From positions 1 through 64,000 of the IMG/VR virus record IMGVR_UViG_3300017971_000001: a stretch of 64,000 nucleotides of DNA. The stretch is one strand, 5' to 3'. Numbering within the stretch: position 1 is the stretch's first letter; each line of letters opens with the position of its first letter. The position numbers and the translations under genes are program-made. Shown in pieces: positions 798 through 64,000 of the stretch. The notes under the pieces are model-generated. The model saw nothing but the letters and a program-made list of their open reading frames with translations. It was not told the origin of the DNA and made no database searches.

Positions 798-3478
<2,681 letters not shown>

Positions 3479-3483
3479 GGTAG

Positions 3484-6225
<2,742 letters not shown>

Positions 6226-34184: not shown

Positions 34185-34186
34185 AG

Positions 34187-34273
34187 CGCGGGGTCAACTA
34201 GTCAGGTCCATGTTCTCGGGCTCATAACCCGAGGGGGCGAAAGCCCCACGCAGGTTCGAATCCTGCCCCGCTA
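34187..34273 (+). tRNA. Initiator-type tRNA-Met(CAT) with an atypical long variable arm
   Basis: CGCGGGG/CCCCGCT+A acceptor with C1:U72 mismatch; anticodon arm TCGGG-CTCATAA-CCCGA; GGTTCGAATCC T-arm; extra GGGGC-GAAA-GCCCC arm; no encoded CCA. Confidence 0.8.
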
Positions 34274-35140
34274 TCAGACCGAGCGGAAGTAGACCGTGGC
34301 GGTCATGCCCTGACTCGCGGCGCCAGCGGTGTAGTTCACGCGCAGGCTCTGGGCCGCCGTGAACGCGACGTTATCCACGAAACCGACGTCGCCGCTCGCG
34401 AACACCCCTGAGTTGCTGAGCGTCATTTGCGTGACGCCGTTTCGCTGGATCTGAACGGTACCCGCGCCCGAGGCGAAGTTGAGCGCGATCGCAAGGATCT
34501 CGGCGTCGCGGGGGACGATATAGTCCGTCTCGACGCCCGGCGTGTTCGTTCCGATCACTGAGGCGTCGCCGTTGACGAACGCCAGCGGCTGCGTCGTGAT
34601 CGTCAATTCTCCGCCGAGGTTGGCGCAGAAGCTGTCGAGCGAGGACAGCGAAGCAATGTCCGCTGTGTTCTGGGTAATGTCTGCGCGGTTCTCGTTCAGC
34701 GCCGCGATTAGCGAGGCCGCGCCGGCGAACCCCGACAAGTTCAGATTGCTTCCGTCATTGAAGGGGAGTTGCTGACCTCGAGCTCCGAGAACCAGGTCCT
34801 GCGCGGCGCCGGCGAGAACCTGCAGAACGGCGTTCCCGCCGCCGTTCCCGATCTGGATCAGGGTCGCGGCGACGTCTGCCCACAGCTGGCGCGACGTCAG
34901 CGATCCTTCGATCCGACTGAGGAGTGCCTCGTCGAGCGTTTCGTTGAACTTGCGGGCGTCGGCGCCGTCGCCCGCGGCGAGCATGATTCGTTGCACGGTT
35001 ACCACCTGGAGAATGGTCATGACGACCGGGCCAACAAACCGATCGGGAAGAACGTTCAGCGCGCTCTGCGTCGCCGGGCCGACGTAGCGGTCGGGGAGGA
35101 CTGAGAGTCCGCGTTGGGCTGCTGGTCCGACGAAGGTCAT
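34274..35140 (-). CDS. Putative structural protein (N-terminal short repeat, coiled coil, beta-sandwich C-terminus)
   Basis: FVGPA.Q..L.VLPD repeated two to three times; beta-rich C-terminus. Confidence 0.6.
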   Translation of the reverse strand: MTFVGPAAQRGLSVLPDRYVGPATQSALNVLPDRFVGPVVMTILQVVTVQRIMLAAGDGADARKFNETLDEALLSRIEGSLTSRQLWADVAATLIQIGNGGGNAVLQVLAGAAQDLVLGARGQQLPFNDGSNLNLSGFAGAASLIAALNENRADITQNTADIASLSSLDSFCANLGGELTITTQPLAFVNGDASVIGTNTPGVETDYIVPRDAEILAIALNFASGAGTVQIQRNGVTQMTLSNSGVFASGDVGFVDNVAFTAAQSLRVNYTAGAASQGMTATVYFRSV

Positions 35141-50955: not shown

Positions 50956-51060
50956 GCTGAGGGAAGCAGGCGGAAAAAGTCGCCATAACTTCTTTCAGAG
51001 CAATCGCTGAGGGAAGCAGGCGGAAAAAGTCGCCATAACTTCTTTCAGAGCAATCGCTGA
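50956..51060. repeat. Exact 50-bp tandem duplication plus a partial third copy
   Basis: gctgagggaagcaggcggaaaaagtcgccataacttctttcagagcaatc at 50956-51005 and 51006-51055; nearby 10-bp tandems at 50801-50820 and 50946-50965. Confidence 0.95.
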
Positions 51061-51299: not shown

Positions 51300-53401
51300 C
51301 TAGCTGAAGATCATGTCTCGGCCAAGCCCGTGACCGATCGATCGGTGATTTCTGGGCCGAACCTCTCCCCGGCCGCCCTTCCCCTGGAAATGGCCCGCAC
51401 CCTCTCCCTCGACTGCTCGAGCGTAGCCGGCGTCGCTGCCGAGGCCGCGGCCGACCATGCAGACGGTGTTCACGTAGAGGCACATGAAGACGTGCGGCCG
51501 CCGACGCCTCACTAGAAGAGTCCGTATCCGCGGCTGCAGCCAAGCGCCCGGCCCATTCGGTCTCGCGTGCGCGTGCCCCTGAAGACCCCCAAGCCTCCCT
51601 CTAAACTTCCCTTTACCTTAGAGGCCCAGCGCCTGCAGCCAGCACCTTTCATGGCGCGACCCAAAGGCGATCCGATCATTCTTCTCCTTCGCTTCAATTC
51701 TGCACGAACCCGTTCTGGCTCCAGCCGCAGCTAGCACCCGTGCCGCGGGCGACGCCTCTTCTGCGTCGGATCGACCCTCCTTCGCCCTTGTAATACGTGA
51801 TCCCTCTCCCGTCCCGAGATCTCAAGCCCAGGGGCGACTCGGTTCTGGAATCCGTAGAGGCTCAGCGGGATCGAGATATGCGAGCGCCTCACTCGGTTCA
51901 TGGAAACATTCCCGTTCCCAGTGGAGGTCGCTCCTCGGTCCCCTTGCCCGTGAAGCGCGCGAAGGGCACCGCGATCGAGAAGCCCTGCCCTCGACAGGCC
52001 ATGCAGTCAAAGCGCAGGAGGTAACGGCGGCGACGGCGCTTCATTCGACGTCCCGCCGCCCGCAGCGACGAAGCAAACCGGACCCAACGGCGTTTCCGAG
52101 GCTGCGGCCTGCTTGCGCGCAGCCCCAGCCGAAATGGAAGGTGGCGGAGTCATGACTTCCTCCGCCCGTCGATTCGTTCTTCTCGATCCCCCAGCCGCAC
52201 TGCATAGAGCGGACATAGTGACTGACCACGCTATACCCCTTCCTGCGCCTGCGTCTCACAGGATCCTCGCGGATCCGTGACCGCGGCCGACCGTAGAGCA
52301 GATCCCGTAGCTGAAATGAGAGCCGATTCCGTCATTGTCCTTGAGGCCCCACGCGAGGTCGAGCCATTGACCTCGACCGCTGAAGTCAAAAAGGCCTATG
52401 TCGCGATTGCTCCAGCTGGAGGTATGGCAGCCGCCCGTCCTGCGTCGACGCCTCATGAAGACCTCCGACGGAACCACTTCGCAGAGCGGCTTAAGCCTCG
52501 GCCGAACGAACGAAAGAGCCCGTAGCCCAGAACCCCCCTTAATCTTGAAGACGGGCAGCATTTTCCCAGCCCGATCGATCGCTCGAGCCCGAAGCCTCGC
52601 CCCTCCCACAGCGACCACGGCATTCTCTGCCGTCGCTTCACACGCGCCTCCAAAGTACGCCGCTGCCCCTCGACCTGCGCAAGCCGATTCCCGTGGAAAA
52701 CCCGACCCCTATTCCTGAGAAGTCCATAGGAATCCCTCTCCAGCGCCTTCCGCAGCCAACGACCGAGCGCAGTCCTCGTCCGTGCATGGTCCAAAATGGA
52801 GCCGAGCGGAAGCAGCGCCTTCTCCTTCTCAACGACGGCATGAGGAAATGTACCAAGAGGCCCCCAGCGCCCTCCTTAGCCCAGCAGAATAAGCCTTACG
52901 CCCGCCAACTCCAAAGAAGTTCCCGAGTCCATGAGAGACGCCGGCGTTCGCCTTCGACCTTCCGTCGTTTATCTCCAGGCGGACCCAGCGGGCCTTGAAA
53001 AGTCCGGCGCCTGATCGCCTCCTGATTCTCACCACCCAGTGAACTCCCCTCGGTCCCGATCGAGACCCATGCCAATTCGGTTGGTCTTCCTGCGACCCGT
53101 CTGCGAGAGGTAGATCGAGAACCCGCCCGACCTCGGCGTCCTGCGAGCGCCTCCGAAGATCACTCGAGGGAACGCGAGGAAGCTGACCTTGAATTCGTGA
53201 AGGCTGTTACGCCGTCGCCGCACGACCCGCTCCCACGAATCCGATCGAGCTTTTGAGGCTCAAGCGAGGGTCTCCGAACGAAGCGCCTGCGCCCCAGCCA
53301 ACAGTTATCGCCAAACTTCCTCCCCAGCTGCGCCGCAGCCCATAGGAGCGGTTTGAGAACCTCAGCGATACGCCCCTTGAGTTTCTGCGGCGTCTTCTCA
53401 T
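51300..53401 (-). other. Array of translationally coupled M-(R/K)-RRRR Gly-rich microprotein genes
   Basis: ORFs 53207-53401, 53029-53223, 52829-53032, 52638-52832, 52453-52641, 52256-52456, 52041-52259, 51898-52044, 51512-51697 and 51300-51512, mostly joined by NTGA or TAG/GTG overlaps. Confidence 0.75.
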
Positions 53402-53673
53402 GCCAGGTCTCCGTATTTCCGCTGCTCCTCCTGAATCGCCCTCTTCTCCTTTTTGCTTAGCGCGATCCGCTTGGCGAAGTGAGCTCGCTTGTACTGGGAT
53501 TCCCATGTTCCCTTGCGGGGTTGGTGCGGAGCCTTTGCACCCGACGTCGGCCAAGCCTGGATCCGATCGCCGCAGGTCACGCAGGGCTGAGCGACTCTTT
53601 CTTTGGCGCGGCCCTCCGGTGCAATTCCGAAGGTTCCGCAGAAGTCGCAGGAGAAATACCAGATACCGCTCAT
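53398..53673 (-). CDS. Small Zn-finger-like protein embedded in the microprotein array
   Basis: CDFC...CVTC; ATGA-coupled at both ends. Confidence 0.6.
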   Translation of the reverse strand: MSGIWYFSCDFCGTFGIAPEGRAKERVAQPCVTCGDRIQAWPTSGAKAPHQPRKGTWESQYKRAHFAKRIALSKKEKRAIQEEQRKYGDLA

Positions 53674-53876
53674 GACGTCCGTGGGATCTTGTAGGGCCTT
53701 GACCACCCGAAGGATCTTGTGAGTCCATAGGCAGCACTCGAAAACAGGCCTCGGCCGCAGGTTGTCCCCCAAGCCCCGCCGAAGCGAACGGAGACAATGA
53801 ACACGCTGTGGTGCAAGCCAAGCCCTTTCGACCGAGGGGCCCGCGTGTAGACCCTGACGCGCCGACCTCGGGTCAC
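53670..53876 (-). CDS. RRRR-family microprotein (divergent)
   Basis: MTRGRRVRV...GLGL...GRGL...YGL; coupled at both ends. Confidence 0.55.
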   Translation of the reverse strand: MTRGRRVRVYTRAPRSKGLGLHHSVFIVSVRFGGAWGTTCGRGLFSSAAYGLTRSFGWSRPYKIPRTS

Positions 53877-54533: not shown

Positions 54534-54817
54534 TCCGGCTTCCAGTTCGCCGCTTCACGGAGACTCTCGAGCGAAGTCGTGCGGGCCAGGTAGTCGTAGG
54601 GACCGTCCCCGTCCTTGTCGAACAGGCTCTCGTCCGCAAGGTCTTCGTAGGGGATCGTGTCCACGTCGCCCGCTCCGTAGTTGGAGGATCCGTCGCTGAA
54701 GCCCTCGGCATAGGCCGTTCGTTCCGCCTCGGTCTTGAAGTGAACGACGCCTTCGAGGTAGCCCTCGCAGCAGCAGAGCAAGGTAAACGGCTTGTCTTCG
54801 TGATTCCCGGTTTTCAC
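54530..54817 (-). CDS. Acidic hypothetical protein
   Basis: Coupled at both ends. Confidence 0.6.
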   Translation of the reverse strand: MKTGNHEDKPFTLLCCCEGYLEGVVHFKTEAERTAYAEGFSDGSSNYGAGDVDTIPYEDLADESLFDKDGDGPYDYLARTTSLESLREAANWKPE

Positions 54818-55227
54818 TAGTAGTCCTCCCGCTTGCGGGCTCCCTCTTTGAGGCTCTTGAACAACTCGACCGCCTGATCCCGCGTCGGCGGCACGCCCTC
54901 CGATTTCAGGAGGTCCGTTCCGCGCCTCCAGATCTCGTAGTATTCGTCGTCGGTCGCGCAGATCAAGTTCAATTTGCCGAACATGAGCTTCTCCTTCTCG
55001 TCGCTGAACTGCTTCAGCCAGTCAGCCAGGCGCGGGTCGATCCGAATGACGAGATCGACGTCGCTGTCCGGCCGCGCGTTTCCGTAAGCATGACTCCCCG
55101 TCAAGAAAGCGTGCTGCTTCCCCCTGCGCGTGACCCTGGCCAGCGCTATGAGCAGCAGAAAGACCGCCGTGCTCGAGATCAACGACATGAAGCAGGCAAG
55201 CATGCCCAGCGCTCCCAACTCTTCCAC
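54817..55227 (-). CDS. Minimal nucleotidyltransferase (MNT/Pol-beta fold) with an N-terminal hydrophobic segment
   Basis: FLTGSHAYG...DSDVDL (GS, DxD); start inferred from a TAG/GTG overlap. Confidence 0.75.
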   Translation of the reverse strand: MEELGALGMLACFMSLISSTAVFLLLIALARVTRRGKQHAFLTGSHAYGNARPDSDVDLVIRIDPRLADWLKQFSDEKEKLMFGKLNLICATDDEYYEIWRRGTDLLKSEGVPPTRDQAVELFKSLKEGARKREDY

Positions 55228-55818
55228 TACCAACTCCCGTGCAGCTTGTTTAAACCTTCGCCGCAGCAATGTTGAACTCCTGAGCCAACGACCCCCTCGG
55301 GGTAGATCAGGTGAAAAGAGAACCTCTTCAGGAATGTGTCCATAGGTCCCGTGCCTACCCTTCTCCTCAACCCAACTCCGTCCTGGACGACGTAGCAGCG
55401 ATACCTTCTGCGGCGGTTCACTACCAATCACCATGGCAGAGGGTCAATCCTGATCCGGTCTGTGCATACAGACCCTTGCCGACGACCCCTTCGCCATACA
55501 CAAGGTGCTTGCCAATGAACTTCGAGAAGTCGTCCATGGCCCCAATGCCCGAGGCGCAACTCTGACCGACGCCGCCCTGAATCGAGAACATGCGATACCT
55601 TCTGCGACGCCTCAAAGGTGGATCGTGTAGTTGCCGGACATGCGTGACGTGCCGCGACCAATCCAGACGCCCGATCGAAGCAGGCGAGAGGACCGCCACT
55701 TCCTAGCCCCGGTTCCGAGTGCTCGGTTCAAACCGATTCCGGTCCCCGTTTGATTGCCGACGCCCGTTGCCGGAGCCGCTGAATAGCGATAGAGCCGCCT
55801 TCTTCCCGCACGATTCAT
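55227..55818 (-). other. Second cluster of three RRRR-family microprotein genes
   Basis: 55612-55818, 55421-55615 and 55227-55421; the last two are clear paralogs. Confidence 0.75.
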
Positions 55819-55847: not shown

Positions 55848-56327
55848 ATGGACGATCCGCCTGTGATCCAGTTCAAGCCGAAGCCAGACCCTCCTCCCAA
55901 GAAGGAGGAGGAGGTCAAGGACGACGGTTACCTCGCGCCCGAGCTCGGGAAGCTCGTCAACCGCCGCGTGTCCCTCCCCAACGAACTGTGGGAAGAAGTG
56001 ATCGACATGGCGAAGGCGGGCGGGAGTAACTACCAGGACCTGCTGGCTTGCTTGATCGACCTCGGCATGAGGGCTCAGGCGCTGGGAGAAGACCGGCCTC
56101 GTCGGGTCCTGGTCGAGACAGGGATTCACACGCGGATCGAGCTCCTGCGCGAGGGGCAGACTCCAGAGTTCCTCGGCGAGGTCCGGATCCCCCAGGTGCC
56201 CGCGGTCGGTGAGGCGATCTCGTTCCAGCGGGCCGGTTACGTCGTCGAGCAGCGCGCCTGGCGCCTGAAGGAGGACGGGGCGACAGCGTTCCTGCGGGTC
56301 AAGCGGTTCGGCAAGAAGAAGCATTAG
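55848..56327 (+). CDS. Ribbon-helix-helix-like regulator fused to a small domain
   Basis: TATCCT-N6-ATG; RRVSLPNELWEEVIDMAKAGG. Confidence 0.6.
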   Translation: MDDPPVIQFKPKPDPPPKKEEEVKDDGYLAPELGKLVNRRVSLPNELWEEVIDMAKAGGSNYQDLLACLIDLGMRAQALGEDRPRRVLVETGIHTRIELLREGQTPEFLGEVRIPQVPAVGEAISFQRAGYVVEQRAWRLKEDGATAFLRVKRFGKKKH

Positions 56328-61290: not shown

Positions 61291-61914
61291 TCACGATCCG
61301 AGCGCTTTCAGCAAAGACGCCGCGGACCAGCGGGCGTCGAAGAGCGGGTGGTGCCAGAGCGCCTGTTCGTCCGGAGGGAACGCTCGCTGCGTTCCCGTGA
61401 CCTCCAAAGCCGTGCGAACGTCCAGCAAGGGGAACGGGCCTTTGAACTCGCGGTCTGAGGGGGGGAGGACGAGAGAGTCCACTTCTCCGTTGACGAACTT
61501 TTCGATATTCTCCCGGCTGGTCTCGTTTCGCCAACTCCTTCTGCTCTCGACGCATGAGTTCAGGAAGCGCGCCTCGACCGGCCATGGCACGTCAGCCCAG
61601 ATCTCGCCGCCTTTCTTTGAGTGGTCGATCCAACGAGACCAGAACCAATCCGAGACGTCGCTCCCACGCATGAGCCGAGTCCCGGGCGGAAGCTTGAGCG
61701 CCTGACGGACGCCCTCGCTCAGCCCCTTCTCGCCCCAGGGGCAGTTCGTCTTGATCCAGTCGTATCCGTCCGGGCTCCCTGAGCAAAGAGTGGGCGGGCA
61801 GTAGGCCCACGCCTCCTCGACGATCGAGTCCTCGTCCAGGACAACGTATCCCACCGCCCAGGTCTGGCCGTGCAGCCCGATCGACTCGCAGTCGAAAACC
61901 ATGCGCAGCGTCAC
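61291..61914 (-). CDS. DEDDh (DnaQ-like) 3'-5' exonuclease
   Basis: GTGA-coupled; VFDCES (ExoI), LLDVRT, HHPLFDA (ExoIII). Confidence 0.8.
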   Translation of the reverse strand: MTLRMVFDCESIGLHGQTWAVGYVVLDEDSIVEEAWAYCPPTLCSGSPDGYDWIKTNCPWGEKGLSEGVRQALKLPPGTRLMRGSDVSDWFWSRWIDHSKKGGEIWADVPWPVEARFLNSCVESRRSWRNETSRENIEKFVNGEVDSLVLPPSDREFKGPFPLLDVRTALEVTGTQRAFPPDEQALWHHPLFDARWSAASLLKALGS

Positions 61915-62564
61915 CGCTCCTCCGCAGGCGTCGCGTTGAGCCGCCCTTGATACTTGACGACCCGGCCTTCCCAGAAGAGAGGTGCTTCGGGCGGAAGGTC
62001 CCTGGACGACTCGACCACGGCGATCAGATCCGTGTTGTTGCACGTCTCCTGCACACACTCGACCGCGACCCCCAGCGACTTGAGGTAGATCTCCAGGCTC
62101 GCCCTGTCGTTCGACTTGGGAGCAGCCGAGACGATCTCTCCGGTCGCGACCGGATCCGGCAGGATCGCGGGGAGCACGAAGCGCAAATGGACCCACTGCA
62201 ACTTCCCGCTCAGTTCGCTGGCCTCCATGAAGAGGTCGTCTAGCTGAATCCCTTCCTTCCAGGCCTTCTCGTCCTCCCCCTTGTTCCAACCGAGGATCAG
62301 GTATCGGCCGCTCTCGTCCATGAGCGCCATGGCCTCCGCCATGGTCCCCGGCCCCTCGACGACCGCGCCTTCGGCCCTCAGTTCCCCAGCGACCCGGATT
62401 GCCTCGACGATCGTTGGAGCCTTCTCGCAACGAGGGATCAGATCGACCGGCGCGCGATCAACGGTCGCCTTCGCGTCCTTCAGGTTCATTCCCGTCAGCC
62501 TGCGCACGGCCTTGATCACAGCGATCTTACGCAAGCCGGGATTCTTGAGCACCAGAGAGATCAT
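61911..62564 (-). CDS. Ribosomal protein bL12 (L7/L12) C-terminal domain fused to an unknown domain
   Basis: KIAVIKAVRRLTGMNLKDAKATVDRAP...LRAEGAVVE. Confidence 0.85.
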   Translation of the reverse strand: MISLVLKNPGLRKIAVIKAVRRLTGMNLKDAKATVDRAPVDLIPRCEKAPTIVEAIRVAGELRAEGAVVEGPGTMAEAMALMDESGRYLILGWNKGEDEKAWKEGIQLDDLFMEASELSGKLQWVHLRFVLPAILPDPVATGEIVSAAPKSNDRASLEIYLKSLGVAVECVQETCNNTDLIAVVESSRDLPPEAPLFWEGRVVKYQGRLNATPAEER

Positions 62565-62767
62565 GGCTTCACCTCTTGTTGCTGTTCTACGCTCGGGGTC
62601 GGACATTCCGGGGACGCCGTCTCCATACCTTTGCAGAGCTTGCAGAAGTGCCAGCGCGAGCCGTCGCCTCGAGGTTCCGACCAGACACTCCATTCGTGCG
62701 CGCAGCGTTCGTCGAGTGCCCCAGCGGGCCCACAGCGCTTCTTGCGGCGCTTATTCCTCTTCGGCAT
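62561..62767 (-). CDS. Small basic Cys/His protein
   Basis: CAHEW...FCKLC; coupled to the bL12 gene. Confidence 0.55.
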   Translation of the reverse strand: MPKRNKRRKKRCGPAGALDERCAHEWSVWSEPRGDGSRWHFCKLCKGMETASPECPTPSVEQQQEVKP

Positions 62768-63389
62768 TTCGCTCCAATTCCTCTACCCTTTTCTTCATGG
62801 ACGCGAACTCTCGGTAGAGATCGGCCGTCTCGTTGCTGATCAGGCCCCGGATCGCCTGCTGAAATGGATTGCCGTAAACCCAGTTGTGAGGACTGGACAT
62901 GACCTCCGGGACCAGGGCGGCGAACGCCAGCCAGTTCAGCTGCTTCTGGGTGAAATCCCTGCCGGCCTCGAAGGCGTCACGGCGCTCGTGTCGATACAGA
63001 CCCTGATCCCGTTCAGCCCGAACGGGCTGAATGATCCCAGGGTTTACAAGAGGGGGGTTCACGTCGAACGAATCCAGGTTGTAGGTGACGTAGACCTCCT
63101 TCCCGTTTGCCTGCGCCGCCTGGCCGTCGTGCTCCGTGTACATTCCTTCGAAGGTCTCGTGCGTCCCTCCCCCGAGTTCCGGCTCGGGCAGCACCGATTC
63201 GATCGAATCTCCCTTCGGGCCGCAGACGATCCGCGCTAGGTTCGTCCAGCCAATCGCCTGGCCGACGATCGAGATTGCGTCGGCGCCGTTCGATCGCGAC
63301 CAGGAGCGGACGACGCGCTCGGCGAGCTCAGGGTCCGATCGATCCGCGAGCCACTCGTTAACCGCGTTCAAGAGATCGTCGTCGCTCAA
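62751..63389 (-). CDS. Hypothetical protein
   Basis: GGAGG RBS; TTGA-coupled start MSDDDLL. Confidence 0.6.
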   Translation of the reverse strand: MSDDDLLNAVNEWLADRSDPELAERVVRSWSRSNGADAISIVGQAIGWTNLARIVCGPKGDSIESVLPEPELGGGTHETFEGMYTEHDGQAAQANGKEVYVTYNLDSFDVNPPLVNPGIIQPVRAERDQGLYRHERRDAFEAGRDFTQKQLNWLAFAALVPEVMSSPHNWVYGNPFQQAIRGLISNETADLYREFASMKKRVEELERNAEEE

Positions 63390-64000
63390 AACCCCTCCAT
63401 GAGTTCTTCCGTGCGCGTATCCCAAAACAACTGGACCCAGTCGCCCATGTTTCCTTGATTCTTTCGTTGGTAGTCGGCCCAGAGCGTCGCGCTCCCCATG
63501 GTGAAGCTAATGCCAGAGGCGAACGTATAGGACGAAAAGGAGAAGTCGCTGAGCGAAAGGGAGAACCCTTTCCCAAGCCCTGCTGAATATGCAGAAGACA
63601 GCCCCCTGCCGTAGGCCAGAAAGCTGAGCAGGGGCCGGGGGCGAAGCCGGCGCCGTCGCCTCTTCATAGGAAGGCTGATCCCATGCGGTAGTTCAGGCCG
63701 GCACCCACGGGCGCTGATCGCTTCCAACTTTCAGAGCAGTCATAGGGAAAGCGGCCGGGTCTAAGCCTCCAGAACGACATGGAGCGGTTGCCCCCCTTCC
63801 CCCTGACCCGATCCTGACCCCAGCCAAGCGCGAACTGACTCGAGGGCGGGTGGTCACGAAGGTAGGTTCGACGGCGTCGTTTCAAGTCGCCAATCCGAAG
63901 AGTCGAGGCCGGCGAACCTGACTGGAACCCAACGCTTGCTCCAGCCCCCGGCCGAACGATAGCCCCCTGCCGCCTGCACTGCCTCGGGCAAAGTATCCGC
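63386..64000 (-). other. Third cluster of RRRR-family microprotein genes, running off the window edge
   Basis: 63386-63667 (MKRRRRRL), 63664-63885 (MKRRRRTY) and a partial upstream ORF with FGRGL ending in TGA at 63882. Confidence 0.7.

What the first reader, a model, noticed from the sequence alone, without database searches (positions are those of the whole stretch)
55227..55818. Second RRRR cluster contains a recent tandem duplication
Seen: 55421-55615 (MRRRRRYRMFSIQGGVGQSCASGIGAMDDFSKFIGKHLVYGEGVVGKGLYAQTGSGLTLCHGDW) and 55227-55421 (MNRRRRYRCYVVQDGVGLRRRVGTGPMDTFLKRFSFHLIYPEGVVGSGVQHCCGEGLNKLHGSW) are both 64 aa and align without gaps; many differences are conservative (LVY/LIY, HGDW/HGSW). 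A third member lies at 55612-55818. Inference: this supports the family being protein-coding and expanding by duplication followed by rapid divergence.
Basis: seen in the sequence. Interest (0 to 1): 0.62.

Follow-up and report, generated by a model that had tools for sequence, protein, structure and literature searches.

The report
Hidden poly-arginine mini-protein family in jumbo phage
The two 64-codon reading frames are real, old duplicate genes, part of a family of about 96 tiny, strongly positively charged proteins that fills about 8% of a 245-kb phage genome, is mostly missed by gene finders and resembles no known protein family.

Summary
On the minus strand, 55421..55227 (A) and 55615..55421 (B) are 64-codon ORFs that align without gaps (50% aa identity, BLASTP E 9e-15). 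A third member, C, lies at 55818..55612.

The ORFs are protein-coding. A related phage contig (L001) carries orthologues. Ten family ORFs give a pooled dN/dS of 0.20, with substitutions at codon positions 1/2/3 of 128/99/256. Neighbouring ordinary genes give 0.23.

The duplication is not recent. A and B share only 54% of nucleotides, synonymous sites are saturated, and blastn and TRF do not detect the pair. A is equally distant from B and from B's orthologue, so the duplication is at least as old as the split of the two phages. L001 lacks A.

The window is the start of a complete 245,276-bp phage genome. That genome holds about 96 such ORFs (median 64 aa, net charge +10), with an M-[KR]-R-R-R-R start and G-x-G-L-x-R motifs. 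They sit in arrays with overlapping stop/start codons, mostly between 50 and 110 kb.

No Pfam, PHROG, NCBIfam or PDB match was found, and the 50,697 GenBank phages hold no relative. AlphaFold2 gives no confident fold. Function is unknown. My best guess is disordered polyanion-binding proteins involved in host takeover.

The parts
55227..55421 (-). Copy A: 64-codon family gene (GTG start, TAG stop). Absent from the related phage contig L001.
   Evidence: Both ends carry the junction TTGGTAGTG.
55421..55615 (-). Copy B: 64-codon family gene. Its TTG start overlaps C's TGA stop, and its TAG stop overlaps A's GTG start by 1 nt.
   Evidence: Its orthologue P0002 (L001 1733-1924) is 77% identical, with dN/dS 0.17.
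55612..55818 (-). Member C: 68-aa family gene with a looser N-terminus (MNRAGRRR). It is the first gene of the leftward operon.
   Evidence: Orthologue L001 1321-1524: 86% aa identity, dN/dS 0.10, codon-position differences 6/5/21.
54817..55227 (-). Downstream nucleotidyltransferase gene (136 aa). Its GTG start overlaps A's stop by 1 nt.
   Evidence: PF01909 E 2.4e-6; public gene calls; junction sequence.
55848..56327 (+). Divergently transcribed 159-aa gene. It bounds the operon: only 29 nt separate its start from C's start.
   Evidence: Codon-position differences against L001 are 14/4/50 in the + frame and 50/4/14 in the antisense ORF.
51300..53401 (-). First array: ten intact family genes plus one frameshifted member. 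Intact genes: 51300-51512, 51512-51697, 51898-52044, 52041-52259, 52256-52456, 52453-52641, 52638-52832, 52829-53032, 53029-53223, 53207-53401. Frameshifted member: about 51694-51901.
   Evidence: JGI and ENA gene calls leave the stretch empty.
53670..53876 (-). Isolated family-like member (VTRGRRVRVY..., with GRGL motifs).
   Evidence: orthologue at L001 3270-3467.
52438..52546 (-). Patch of 111 nt that is 98% identical to genome 88736-88846. This is a truly recent transfer between two arrays and spans a gene junction.
   Evidence: The L001 orthologue has a different C-terminus.
63386..63885 (-). Start of the next array within the window (63386-63667 and 63664-63885). It continues beyond 64 kb.

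Best explanation
What A and B are. A and B are neighbouring members of a lineage-specific family of about 96 genuine small-protein genes in a 245-kb phage with direct terminal repeats.

The proteins. Each gene encodes about 64 residues. The protein begins with a start codon followed by [K/R]-R-R-R-R. The body is 20% Gly, 12% Arg and rich in aromatic residues, carries two or three G-x-G-L-x-R motifs, and gives a net charge of about +10.

Gene arrangement and translation. The genes lie head to tail in one direction, and the stop of one overlaps the start of the next (NTGA or TAGTG). They are most likely translated one after another from long transcripts by termination-reinitiation. This step is inferred.

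History of the pair. A and B descend from one tandem duplication of a B-like unit, and the same TTGGTAGTG junction flanks A. That duplication is old, at least as old as the split from the related phage, which has since lost A or never fixed it. The family evolves by birth and death: whole-unit gain and loss, frameshift decay and occasional patch transfer between arrays. Each surviving gene is kept under purifying selection.

Function (inferred; my confidence in this part alone is about 0.3). The proteins are disordered polycations whose Arg run and Arg/Gly/aromatic body bind polyanions such as RNA, DNA or the ribosome. They are made early, together with neighbouring nucleotide-metabolism and translation-related genes, as a diversified host-takeover set.

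The stated confidence covers the genetic and evolutionary description, not the function.
For: Coding frame. Ten window/L001 orthologue pairs give a pooled dN/dS of 0.20, with differences at codon positions 1/2/3 of 128/99/256. Seven ordinary neighbour genes give 0.23 and 118/98/263. GC3 is the highest of the three codon positions in this frame. The Arg run uses all six Arg codons: AGG 90, CGC 66, AGA 49, CGA 44, CGG 34, CGT 28. Gly is 90% conserved between orthologues, Arg 79% and Trp/Tyr/Phe 72-76%.

Family size. 96 ORFs fit the definition, against 2-10 in ten Markov-shuffled genomes. Of these, 88 lie between 50 and 110 kb, and together they cover 7.7% of the genome.

Coupling. 65 of 72 starts read NTGA. 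About 59 of the 72 follow an upstream open frame of 50 or more codons that ends in that TGA. A G-rich stretch lies at -11 to -6.

Age of the duplication. A-B share 54% of nucleotides and dS is 1.56. A is equally far from B'. Three-taxon site counts are 14/14/56.

Turnover. Whole-unit indels relative to L001, a frameshifted member and the 111-nt 98% identical patch.

Disorder and charge. AlphaFold2 mean pLDDT is 47.7 and 43.6. The charge-hydropathy plot of 96 disordered. There are no signal peptides or transmembrane segments.

Neighbourhood. NTase, HTH, NT5C, DHFR, an L7/L12 C-terminal-domain protein and cpYpsA.
Against: Only one related contig exists, so selection was measured on about a dozen members, and the alignments were picked in the protein frame. 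Public gene callers skip nearly all members. B's TTG start is unusual, and Prodigal-type calls start B at an internal ATG. A low pLDDT may reflect a shallow and very divergent alignment rather than true disorder. Nothing shows binding to nucleic acids. RGG boxes are depleted (9 against 34 expected). A need for about 96 different sequences is not explained by non-specific polyanion binding.
Confidence: 0.78

Rival explanations
1. One reading: A and B are a recent tandem duplication that then diverged very fast.
For: A/B is the best-scoring paralogue pair in the genome (score 125; all other pairs but one score 62 or less). Both units end in HG[SD]W-stop-GTG. A is absent from the related contig. 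A-B dN/dS is 0.37, higher than B-B' at 0.17.
Against: Nucleotide identity is 54% and synonymous sites are saturated. The pair is not detected by blastn self-search or by TRF. A shares no more sites with B than with B' (14 against 14). B has therefore changed as much since parting from A as B' has.
Confidence: 0.1
2. The ORFs are artefacts of high G+C content, or a non-coding repeat (RNA or protein-binding sites) whose conserved motif happens to read as Arg codons.
For: The Arg/Gly/Ser/Cys/Trp-rich composition looks like out-of-frame translation of GC-rich DNA. Gene callers skip these ORFs. There is no fold and no homologue.
Against: Substitutions concentrate twofold at the third codon position, and dN/dS is 0.2 in this frame. 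All six Arg codons are interchanged. Conserved Gly residues carry synonymous changes. 96 ORFs fit the definition against 2-10 expected. There are no Rfam matches.
Confidence: 0.03
3. The arrays encode precursor peptides of ribosomally made, post-translationally modified natural products (RiPPs), with the Arg run serving as a minimal leader or recognition tag.
For: There are many small paralogous ORFs with a conserved N-terminus and a variable remainder. Two Cys per protein is the commonest count (37 of 96).
Against: The conserved N-terminal part is only 5-6 residues. Conservation runs along the whole protein, including the C-terminal tenth. The phage genome has no radical-SAM or YcaO gene. The LanC test was uninformative because the controls did not ring. 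Cys positions are not conserved between A and B.
Confidence: 0.06
4. They are virion-packaged, protamine-like proteins that neutralise or condense the 245-kb DNA, or are injected with it.
For: They are small and carry a net charge of about +10 with an N-terminal Arg run. From my own knowledge, baculovirus P6.9 and adenovirus Mu/VII have similar features.
Against: Arg is 17% overall and 12% in the body, far below protamines. The arrays lie among nucleotide-metabolism and regulatory genes, not structural ones. A counter-ion role does not need about 96 individually conserved sequences. Tailed phages normally package DNA without such proteins (own knowledge).
Confidence: 0.08
5. They are membrane-active, cell-penetrating or antimicrobial-peptide-like cationic Gly/aromatic-rich peptides that act on host or competitor envelopes.
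For: The composition is cationic and rich in Gly and Trp/Phe/Tyr. Clusters of Gly-rich antimicrobial peptide genes also evolve by tandem duplication (PMC2453101, listed).
Against: There is no signal peptide or hydrophobic segment (7 of 96 and 2 of 96). No amphipathic helix is predicted. No export route is evident.
Confidence: 0.05

Closest known systems
Arginine-rich-motif peptides of phage and viral regulators (lambda N, HK022 Nun, HIV Tat/Rev); comparison from my own knowledge
   Same: A short Arg cluster near the N-terminus of a small protein that is disordered on its own, in a phage, plausibly contacting nucleic acid.
   Different: There is no sequence relationship. The motif here is a homopolymeric R4-R5 directly after the start codon, present in about 96 paralogues. 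No boxB/nut-like RNA partner was sought or seen, and the Gly-motif body has no counterpart.
Large precursor-peptide families of RiPPs, such as prochlorosin ProcA genes; comparison from my own knowledge
   Same: Dozens of small paralogous ORFs with a shared N-terminus and diversified remainder.
   Different: The leader would be only 5-6 residues. Conserved Gly motifs span the body. The phage has no radical-SAM or YcaO maturase.
Protamine-like DNA-condensing proteins of large DNA viruses (baculovirus P6.9, adenovirus Mu/VII); comparison from my own knowledge
   Same: Small proteins of about 20-200 aa with an Arg run at the N-terminus, strongly cationic.
   Different: Arg content is much lower here (17%). 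The genes are multi-copy and diversified, and they lie in a non-structural region of a tailed phage.
Tandemly duplicated clusters of glycine-rich cationic antimicrobial peptide genes (C. elegans nlp/cnc, PMC2453101)
   Same: Gly/aromatic-rich small cationic products, with tandem arrays shaped by duplication and divergence.
   Different: Those are eukaryotic genes with signal peptides. Here there is no secretion signal, and the genes are translationally coupled in operons.
Multigene families and gene 'accordions' of large DNA viruses (ASFV MGF, poxvirus K3L arrays); comparison from my own knowledge
   Same: Arrays of paralogues with frequent whole-gene gain and loss between related viruses.
   Different: Those encode larger folded proteins. 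Nothing comparable in number (about 96) or size (64 aa) is known to me for a phage.

Membership tests
Recent tandem duplication (DNA-level repeat) | High nucleotide identity between adjacent copies, detectable as a DNA repeat | tested here: not met
   Nucleotide identity is 54% and pS is 0.66. There is no hit in the blastn self-search or in TRF.
Recent tandem duplication (DNA-level repeat) | The copies are closer to each other than either is to the orthologue in a sister genome | tested here: not met
   A-B and A-B' both share 54% of nucleotides, while B-B' share 76%. Site counts are 14/14/56.
Protein-coding gene under selection | Excess of third-position and synonymous change between orthologues | tested here: met
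   Pooled dN/dS is 0.20 with position counts 128/99/256, equal to control genes.
Translationally coupled operon genes | Stop codon of the upstream gene overlaps the start codon of the next gene | tested here: met
   C/B junction TTGA; B/A and A/NTase junctions TAGTG. 65 of 72 family starts read NTGA. Reinitiation itself was not tested.
RiPP precursor peptides | Dedicated maturase genes in the locus or genome | tested here: not met
   Radical_SAM and YcaO are absent from the complete phage genome. The LanC test was inconclusive because no control genome rang. Host enzymes were not tested.
RiPP precursor peptides | Conserved leader of about 20 or more residues and a hypervariable core | tested here: not met
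   Only M-x-R-R-R-R is shared. Gly motifs are conserved along the whole length.
RGG/RG-box RNA-binding proteins | Clustered RGG repeats | tested here: not met
   RGG occurs 9 times against 34 expected from composition. GRG is enriched (65 against 34) as part of the G-x-G motif.
Arginine-rich-motif RNA binders (lambda N type) | Arg-rich segment near the N-terminus | tested here: met
   R at positions 3-5 in 90% or more of 71 members.
Arginine-rich-motif RNA binders (lambda N type) | Specific RNA hairpin partner and binding to it | not testable with these tools
   Needs binding assays. No known RNA family lies at 50-57 kb.
Secreted cationic antimicrobial peptides | Signal peptide or membrane-inserting hydrophobic segment | tested here: not met
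   7 of 96 have a hydrophobic 9-residue window, and 2 of 96 a transmembrane-like window.
Protamine-like viral DNA-condensing proteins | Very high Arg content and presence in the virion | tested here: inconclusive
   Arg is 17% overall and 12% in the body, which is low for protamines. Virion content is not testable here.
Any curated protein family (Pfam, PHROGs, NCBIfam, PDB sequences) | Significant profile match | tested here: not met
   No hits. One search gave one chance hit among 71 members (EpsC, E 0.004). The profile search of 1.84 billion representatives found only two true members, one from this genome and one from a relative.

The most novel reading that the evidence does not exclude
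A jumbo phage devotes about 8% of its genome to roughly a hundred translationally coupled, individually conserved polycationic mini-proteins. These would form a previously unseen class of phage effectors: a diversified set of disordered binders aimed at host RNA, ribosomes, DNA or defence systems. Standard gene finders systematically miss them, so similar hidden families may exist in other high-GC phages.
Probability: 0.35. Interest if true: 0.85.

Novelty: categorically new. Interest (0 to 1): 0.7.

Why it matters
A phage gene family of about 96 paralogues would be extraordinary in size. It shows that a large share of a jumbo-phage genome can be real coding sequence that automatic annotation leaves blank: JGI and ENA calls found 1 of about 14 members at 51.3-55.8 kb of the window. 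It also offers a compact natural example of birth-and-death evolution, with unit-precise gain and loss, pseudogenes and patch conversion, under purifying selection in a virus.

If the proteins prove to be a diversified set of polyanion binders or anti-host effectors, this would open a new class of phage-host interaction factors. It would also justify re-scanning high-GC phage genomes for coupled mini-ORF arrays.

Tried and rejected
- Structure: AlphaFold2 on B and on A with 71- and 79-sequence family alignments gave no confident fold (pLDDT 47.7 and 43.6), so no fold search was run. The ESM Atlas gave no usable hit.
- Family libraries: Pfam, PHROGs, NCBIfam and PDB sequence searches gave nothing.
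- Large profile search: apart from two true members, the hits were low-complexity repeat proteins, two of them with GAGLSKSIGxG-type repeats and no Pfam domain.
- More relatives:
  - The IMG/VR scans with the NTase and with a 546-aa protein found no relative.
  - The family alignment was too variable for the pattern scan.
  - The metagenome scan returned only this same genome.
  - tblastn against 50,697 GenBank phages found nothing meaningful.
  - blastn of 51-56 kb against those phages found nothing.
No read evidence was obtained, read laying was not used, and I did not try another route.
- Ideas rejected:
  - GW/WG 'Argonaute hook' motifs: Trp next to Gly in 36% of cases against 32% expected.
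  - RGG boxes: depleted.
  - Signal peptide or membrane segment: absent.
  - Phage tRNA-Arg to serve the AGR-rich Arg runs: none. The tRNAs are Met, Thr, Glu, Gly and Leu, plus a tmRNA.
  - Known RNA families at 50-57 kb: none.
  - Sigma-70 promoters and intrinsic terminators: uninformative.
- Literature: two full-text searches found no description of such a family.
- An HMM built from a loose seed set gave only weak scores, because the family is very divergent. I therefore defined the family operationally: start codon, basic run, 40-100 aa, Gly at 12% or more.

Full report
**1. The observation**

On the minus strand, ORF A (55421..55227, GTG start) and ORF B (55615..55421, TTG start) are 64 codons each. 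A third ORF, C (55818..55612, ATG start, 68 aa), lies directly upstream.

A and B align without gaps, with 32/64 identical residues and BLASTP E 9e-15. At the nucleotide level they share only 54%. Of the 32 identical residues, 16 use the same codon and 16 a synonymous one.

Shuffling the alignment columns gives 16.5 identical residues on average (maximum 28 in 20,000 shuffles) against 31 observed. The other five reading frames of the same alignment give 16-25.

**2. Where it lies**

The window is the first 64 kb of a complete virus record of 245,276 bp (63% G+C) with 123-bp direct terminal repeats. Collagen-like tail-fibre genes lie at 1.3-6.2 kb.

C, B and A head a leftward operon.
- Only 29 nt separate C's start from the start of a divergent 159-aa gene (55848-56327, +). 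That gene's reality is shown by codon-position differences of 14/4/50 against a relative, whereas the antisense ORF gives 50/4/14.
- Downstream of A comes a nucleotidyltransferase gene (54817-55227, PF01909).
- The junctions are TTGA (C/B) and TAGTG (B/A and A/NTase). The same TTGGTAGTG flanks A on both sides.

**3. A very large family**

Scanning the genome for a start codon followed by a basic run ([RK]RRR type), a length of 40-100 codons and at least 12% Gly gives 96 ORFs. Ten second-order Markov genomes give 2-10.
- 88 of the 96 lie between 50 and 110 kb, in co-directional arrays. These run on the minus strand up to about 95 kb and on the plus strand from 96.8 to 103 kb.
- Together they cover 7.7% of the genome.
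- Median length is 64 aa and median net charge is +10.
- The 71-sequence alignment has the consensus M-x-R-R-R-R ... G-x-G-L-x-x-x-x-G-x-G ... G-x-G-x-x-x-x-x-G-x-G.
- After G-x-G, the commonest residues are L at +1 and R at +3.
- 65 of 72 strict members start with NTGA. About 59 of these follow an upstream open frame of 50 or more codons that ends in that TGA, usually another family member. A G-rich stretch lies at -11 to -6.

**4. They are genes**

A word search found one relative of B (P0002, 77% identical) on a 22.8-kb Logan contig, L001, which is syntenic with 51-57 kb of the window.
- Ten orthologous family pairs give a pooled dN/dS of 0.20, with 128/99/256 differences at codon positions 1/2/3.
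- Seven ordinary neighbour genes give 0.23 and 118/98/263.
- For B the ratio is 0.17, and for C it is 0.10.
- The Arg run uses all six Arg codons in quantity, so the amino acid is what is conserved, not a DNA word.
- GC3 is the highest of the three positions in this frame.
- Between orthologues, Gly (90%), Arg (79%) and Trp/Tyr/Phe (72-76%) are the best-kept residues, and conservation is even along the protein.
- B's orthologue starts with ATG at the Arg run, overlapping the upstream stop as ATGA. The internal ATG that gene callers chose for B is GTG in the relative.
- No Rfam family matches the region.

**5. Not recent**

A/B is the most similar paralogue pair in the genome: it scores 125 without the N-terminus, the next pair scores 118, and all others score 62 or less. 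Nevertheless:
- pS is 0.66, so dS is about 1.6 and saturated.
- blastn self-search and TRF do not see the pair.
- A is as far from B' (54% nt) as from B (54%), whereas B and B' share 76%.
- Informative sites split as A=B 14, A=B' 14 and B=B' 56.

The duplication is therefore at least as old as the divergence of the two phages (dS about 0.9). L001 has B' immediately followed by the NTase gene and lacks A. The shared junction repeat suggests that A arose as an in-place tandem copy and was later lost from the L001 lineage by recombination between the junctions. That last step is an inference.

**6. Birth and death**

Against L001, four whole units differ in presence. A is found only in the window. 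L001 1521-1733, about 4291-4497 and about 5293-5495 are found only in L001.

One window member (about 51901-51694) is frameshifted, while its L001 orthologue is intact.

A 111-nt patch (52438-52546) is 98% identical to 88736-88846 and spans a gene junction. The L001 orthologue has a different C-terminus, so the window copy is probably the recipient. This patch, not A/B, is the recent event.

**7. What the proteins might do**

No similarity to any known family was found:
- Pfam, PHROGs, NCBIfam and PDB sequences gave nothing.
- A profile search of 1.84 billion representatives gave only two true members, one from this genome and one from the relative.
- Six-frame searches of 50,697 GenBank phages found nothing.

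Structure and sequence features:
- AlphaFold2 gives no confident fold and no beta structure for B or A.
- A charge-hydropathy plot of 96 disordered.
- There are no signal peptides or membrane segments. RGG boxes are depleted, and GW motifs are not enriched.
- The phage has no radical-SAM or YcaO gene.

Genes interspersed with the arrays are non-structural: an HTH regulator, the NTase, NT5C, DHFR, an L7/L12 C-terminal-domain protein and cpYpsA.

My best guess is that they are disordered polycations that bind RNA, DNA or ribosomes, are made from long coupled transcripts, and form a diversified host-takeover set. I give the function about 0.3. Nothing here tests it.

**8. Annotation gap**

In the JGI and ENA assemblies of this same phage, only B is called, and it is called as 56 aa from an internal ATG. 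A, C and the whole 51.3-53.4-kb array are left without genes.

**9. Limits**

Only one relative is available. Selection was measured on about a dozen members. The family definition is operational.

Noticed in passing
G000 128149-128557 (-), outside the window: ARAGORN calls a phage-encoded tmRNA (tag ADQKAHLPTATSRA). It also calls tRNAs Thr, Glu, Gly(UCC) and Leu elsewhere in the genome, and no tRNA-Arg.
   Followed up: no
window 61911-62693 (-): A 260-aa ORF carries a ribosomal protein L7/L12 C-terminal domain (PF00542, E 2.6e-12). Together with the tmRNA, it hints that the phage interferes with translation.
   Followed up: no
window 52438-52546 and G000 88736-88846: A 111-nt patch, 98% identical, is shared by family members in two arrays 36 kb apart and spans a stop/start junction. 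It is a recent conversion or transfer.
   Followed up: partly
window about 51694-51901 (-): This family member is frameshifted in the window: its N-terminal half is in one frame and its C-terminal half in another. The L001 orthologue (5797-6003) is intact. The sequence is identical in independent assemblies.
   Followed up: partly
window 50956-51060: A perfect 50-nt tandem repeat (2.1 copies) lies just downstream of the first array.
   Followed up: no
window 34186-34275 (+): The tRNA-Met call is 90 nt long, unusually long for a tRNA. It lies between two minus-strand ORFs.
   Followed up: no
window 1265-6225 (+): Two large collagen-like tail-fibre genes (737 and 911 aa) with extensive internal and mutual repeats.
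   Followed up: no
G000 113245-113941, outside the window: A long, degenerate tandem repeat region of about 70-75 nt period-like self-matches at 70-72% identity.
   Followed up: no
G000 97075-97293 and 98191-98382 (+), outside the window: The second most similar paralogue pair of the family (score 118), 1.1 kb apart. It is another old duplicate.
   Followed up: no
P0004 and P0009 (unrelated metagenomic proteins): Long proteins with about 20-residue repeats of the form GAGLSKSIGxGxPQA echo the family's G-x-G-L-x-x-S-x-G-x-G motif. They have no Pfam domain, and the resemblance is probably low-complexity.
   Followed up: partly
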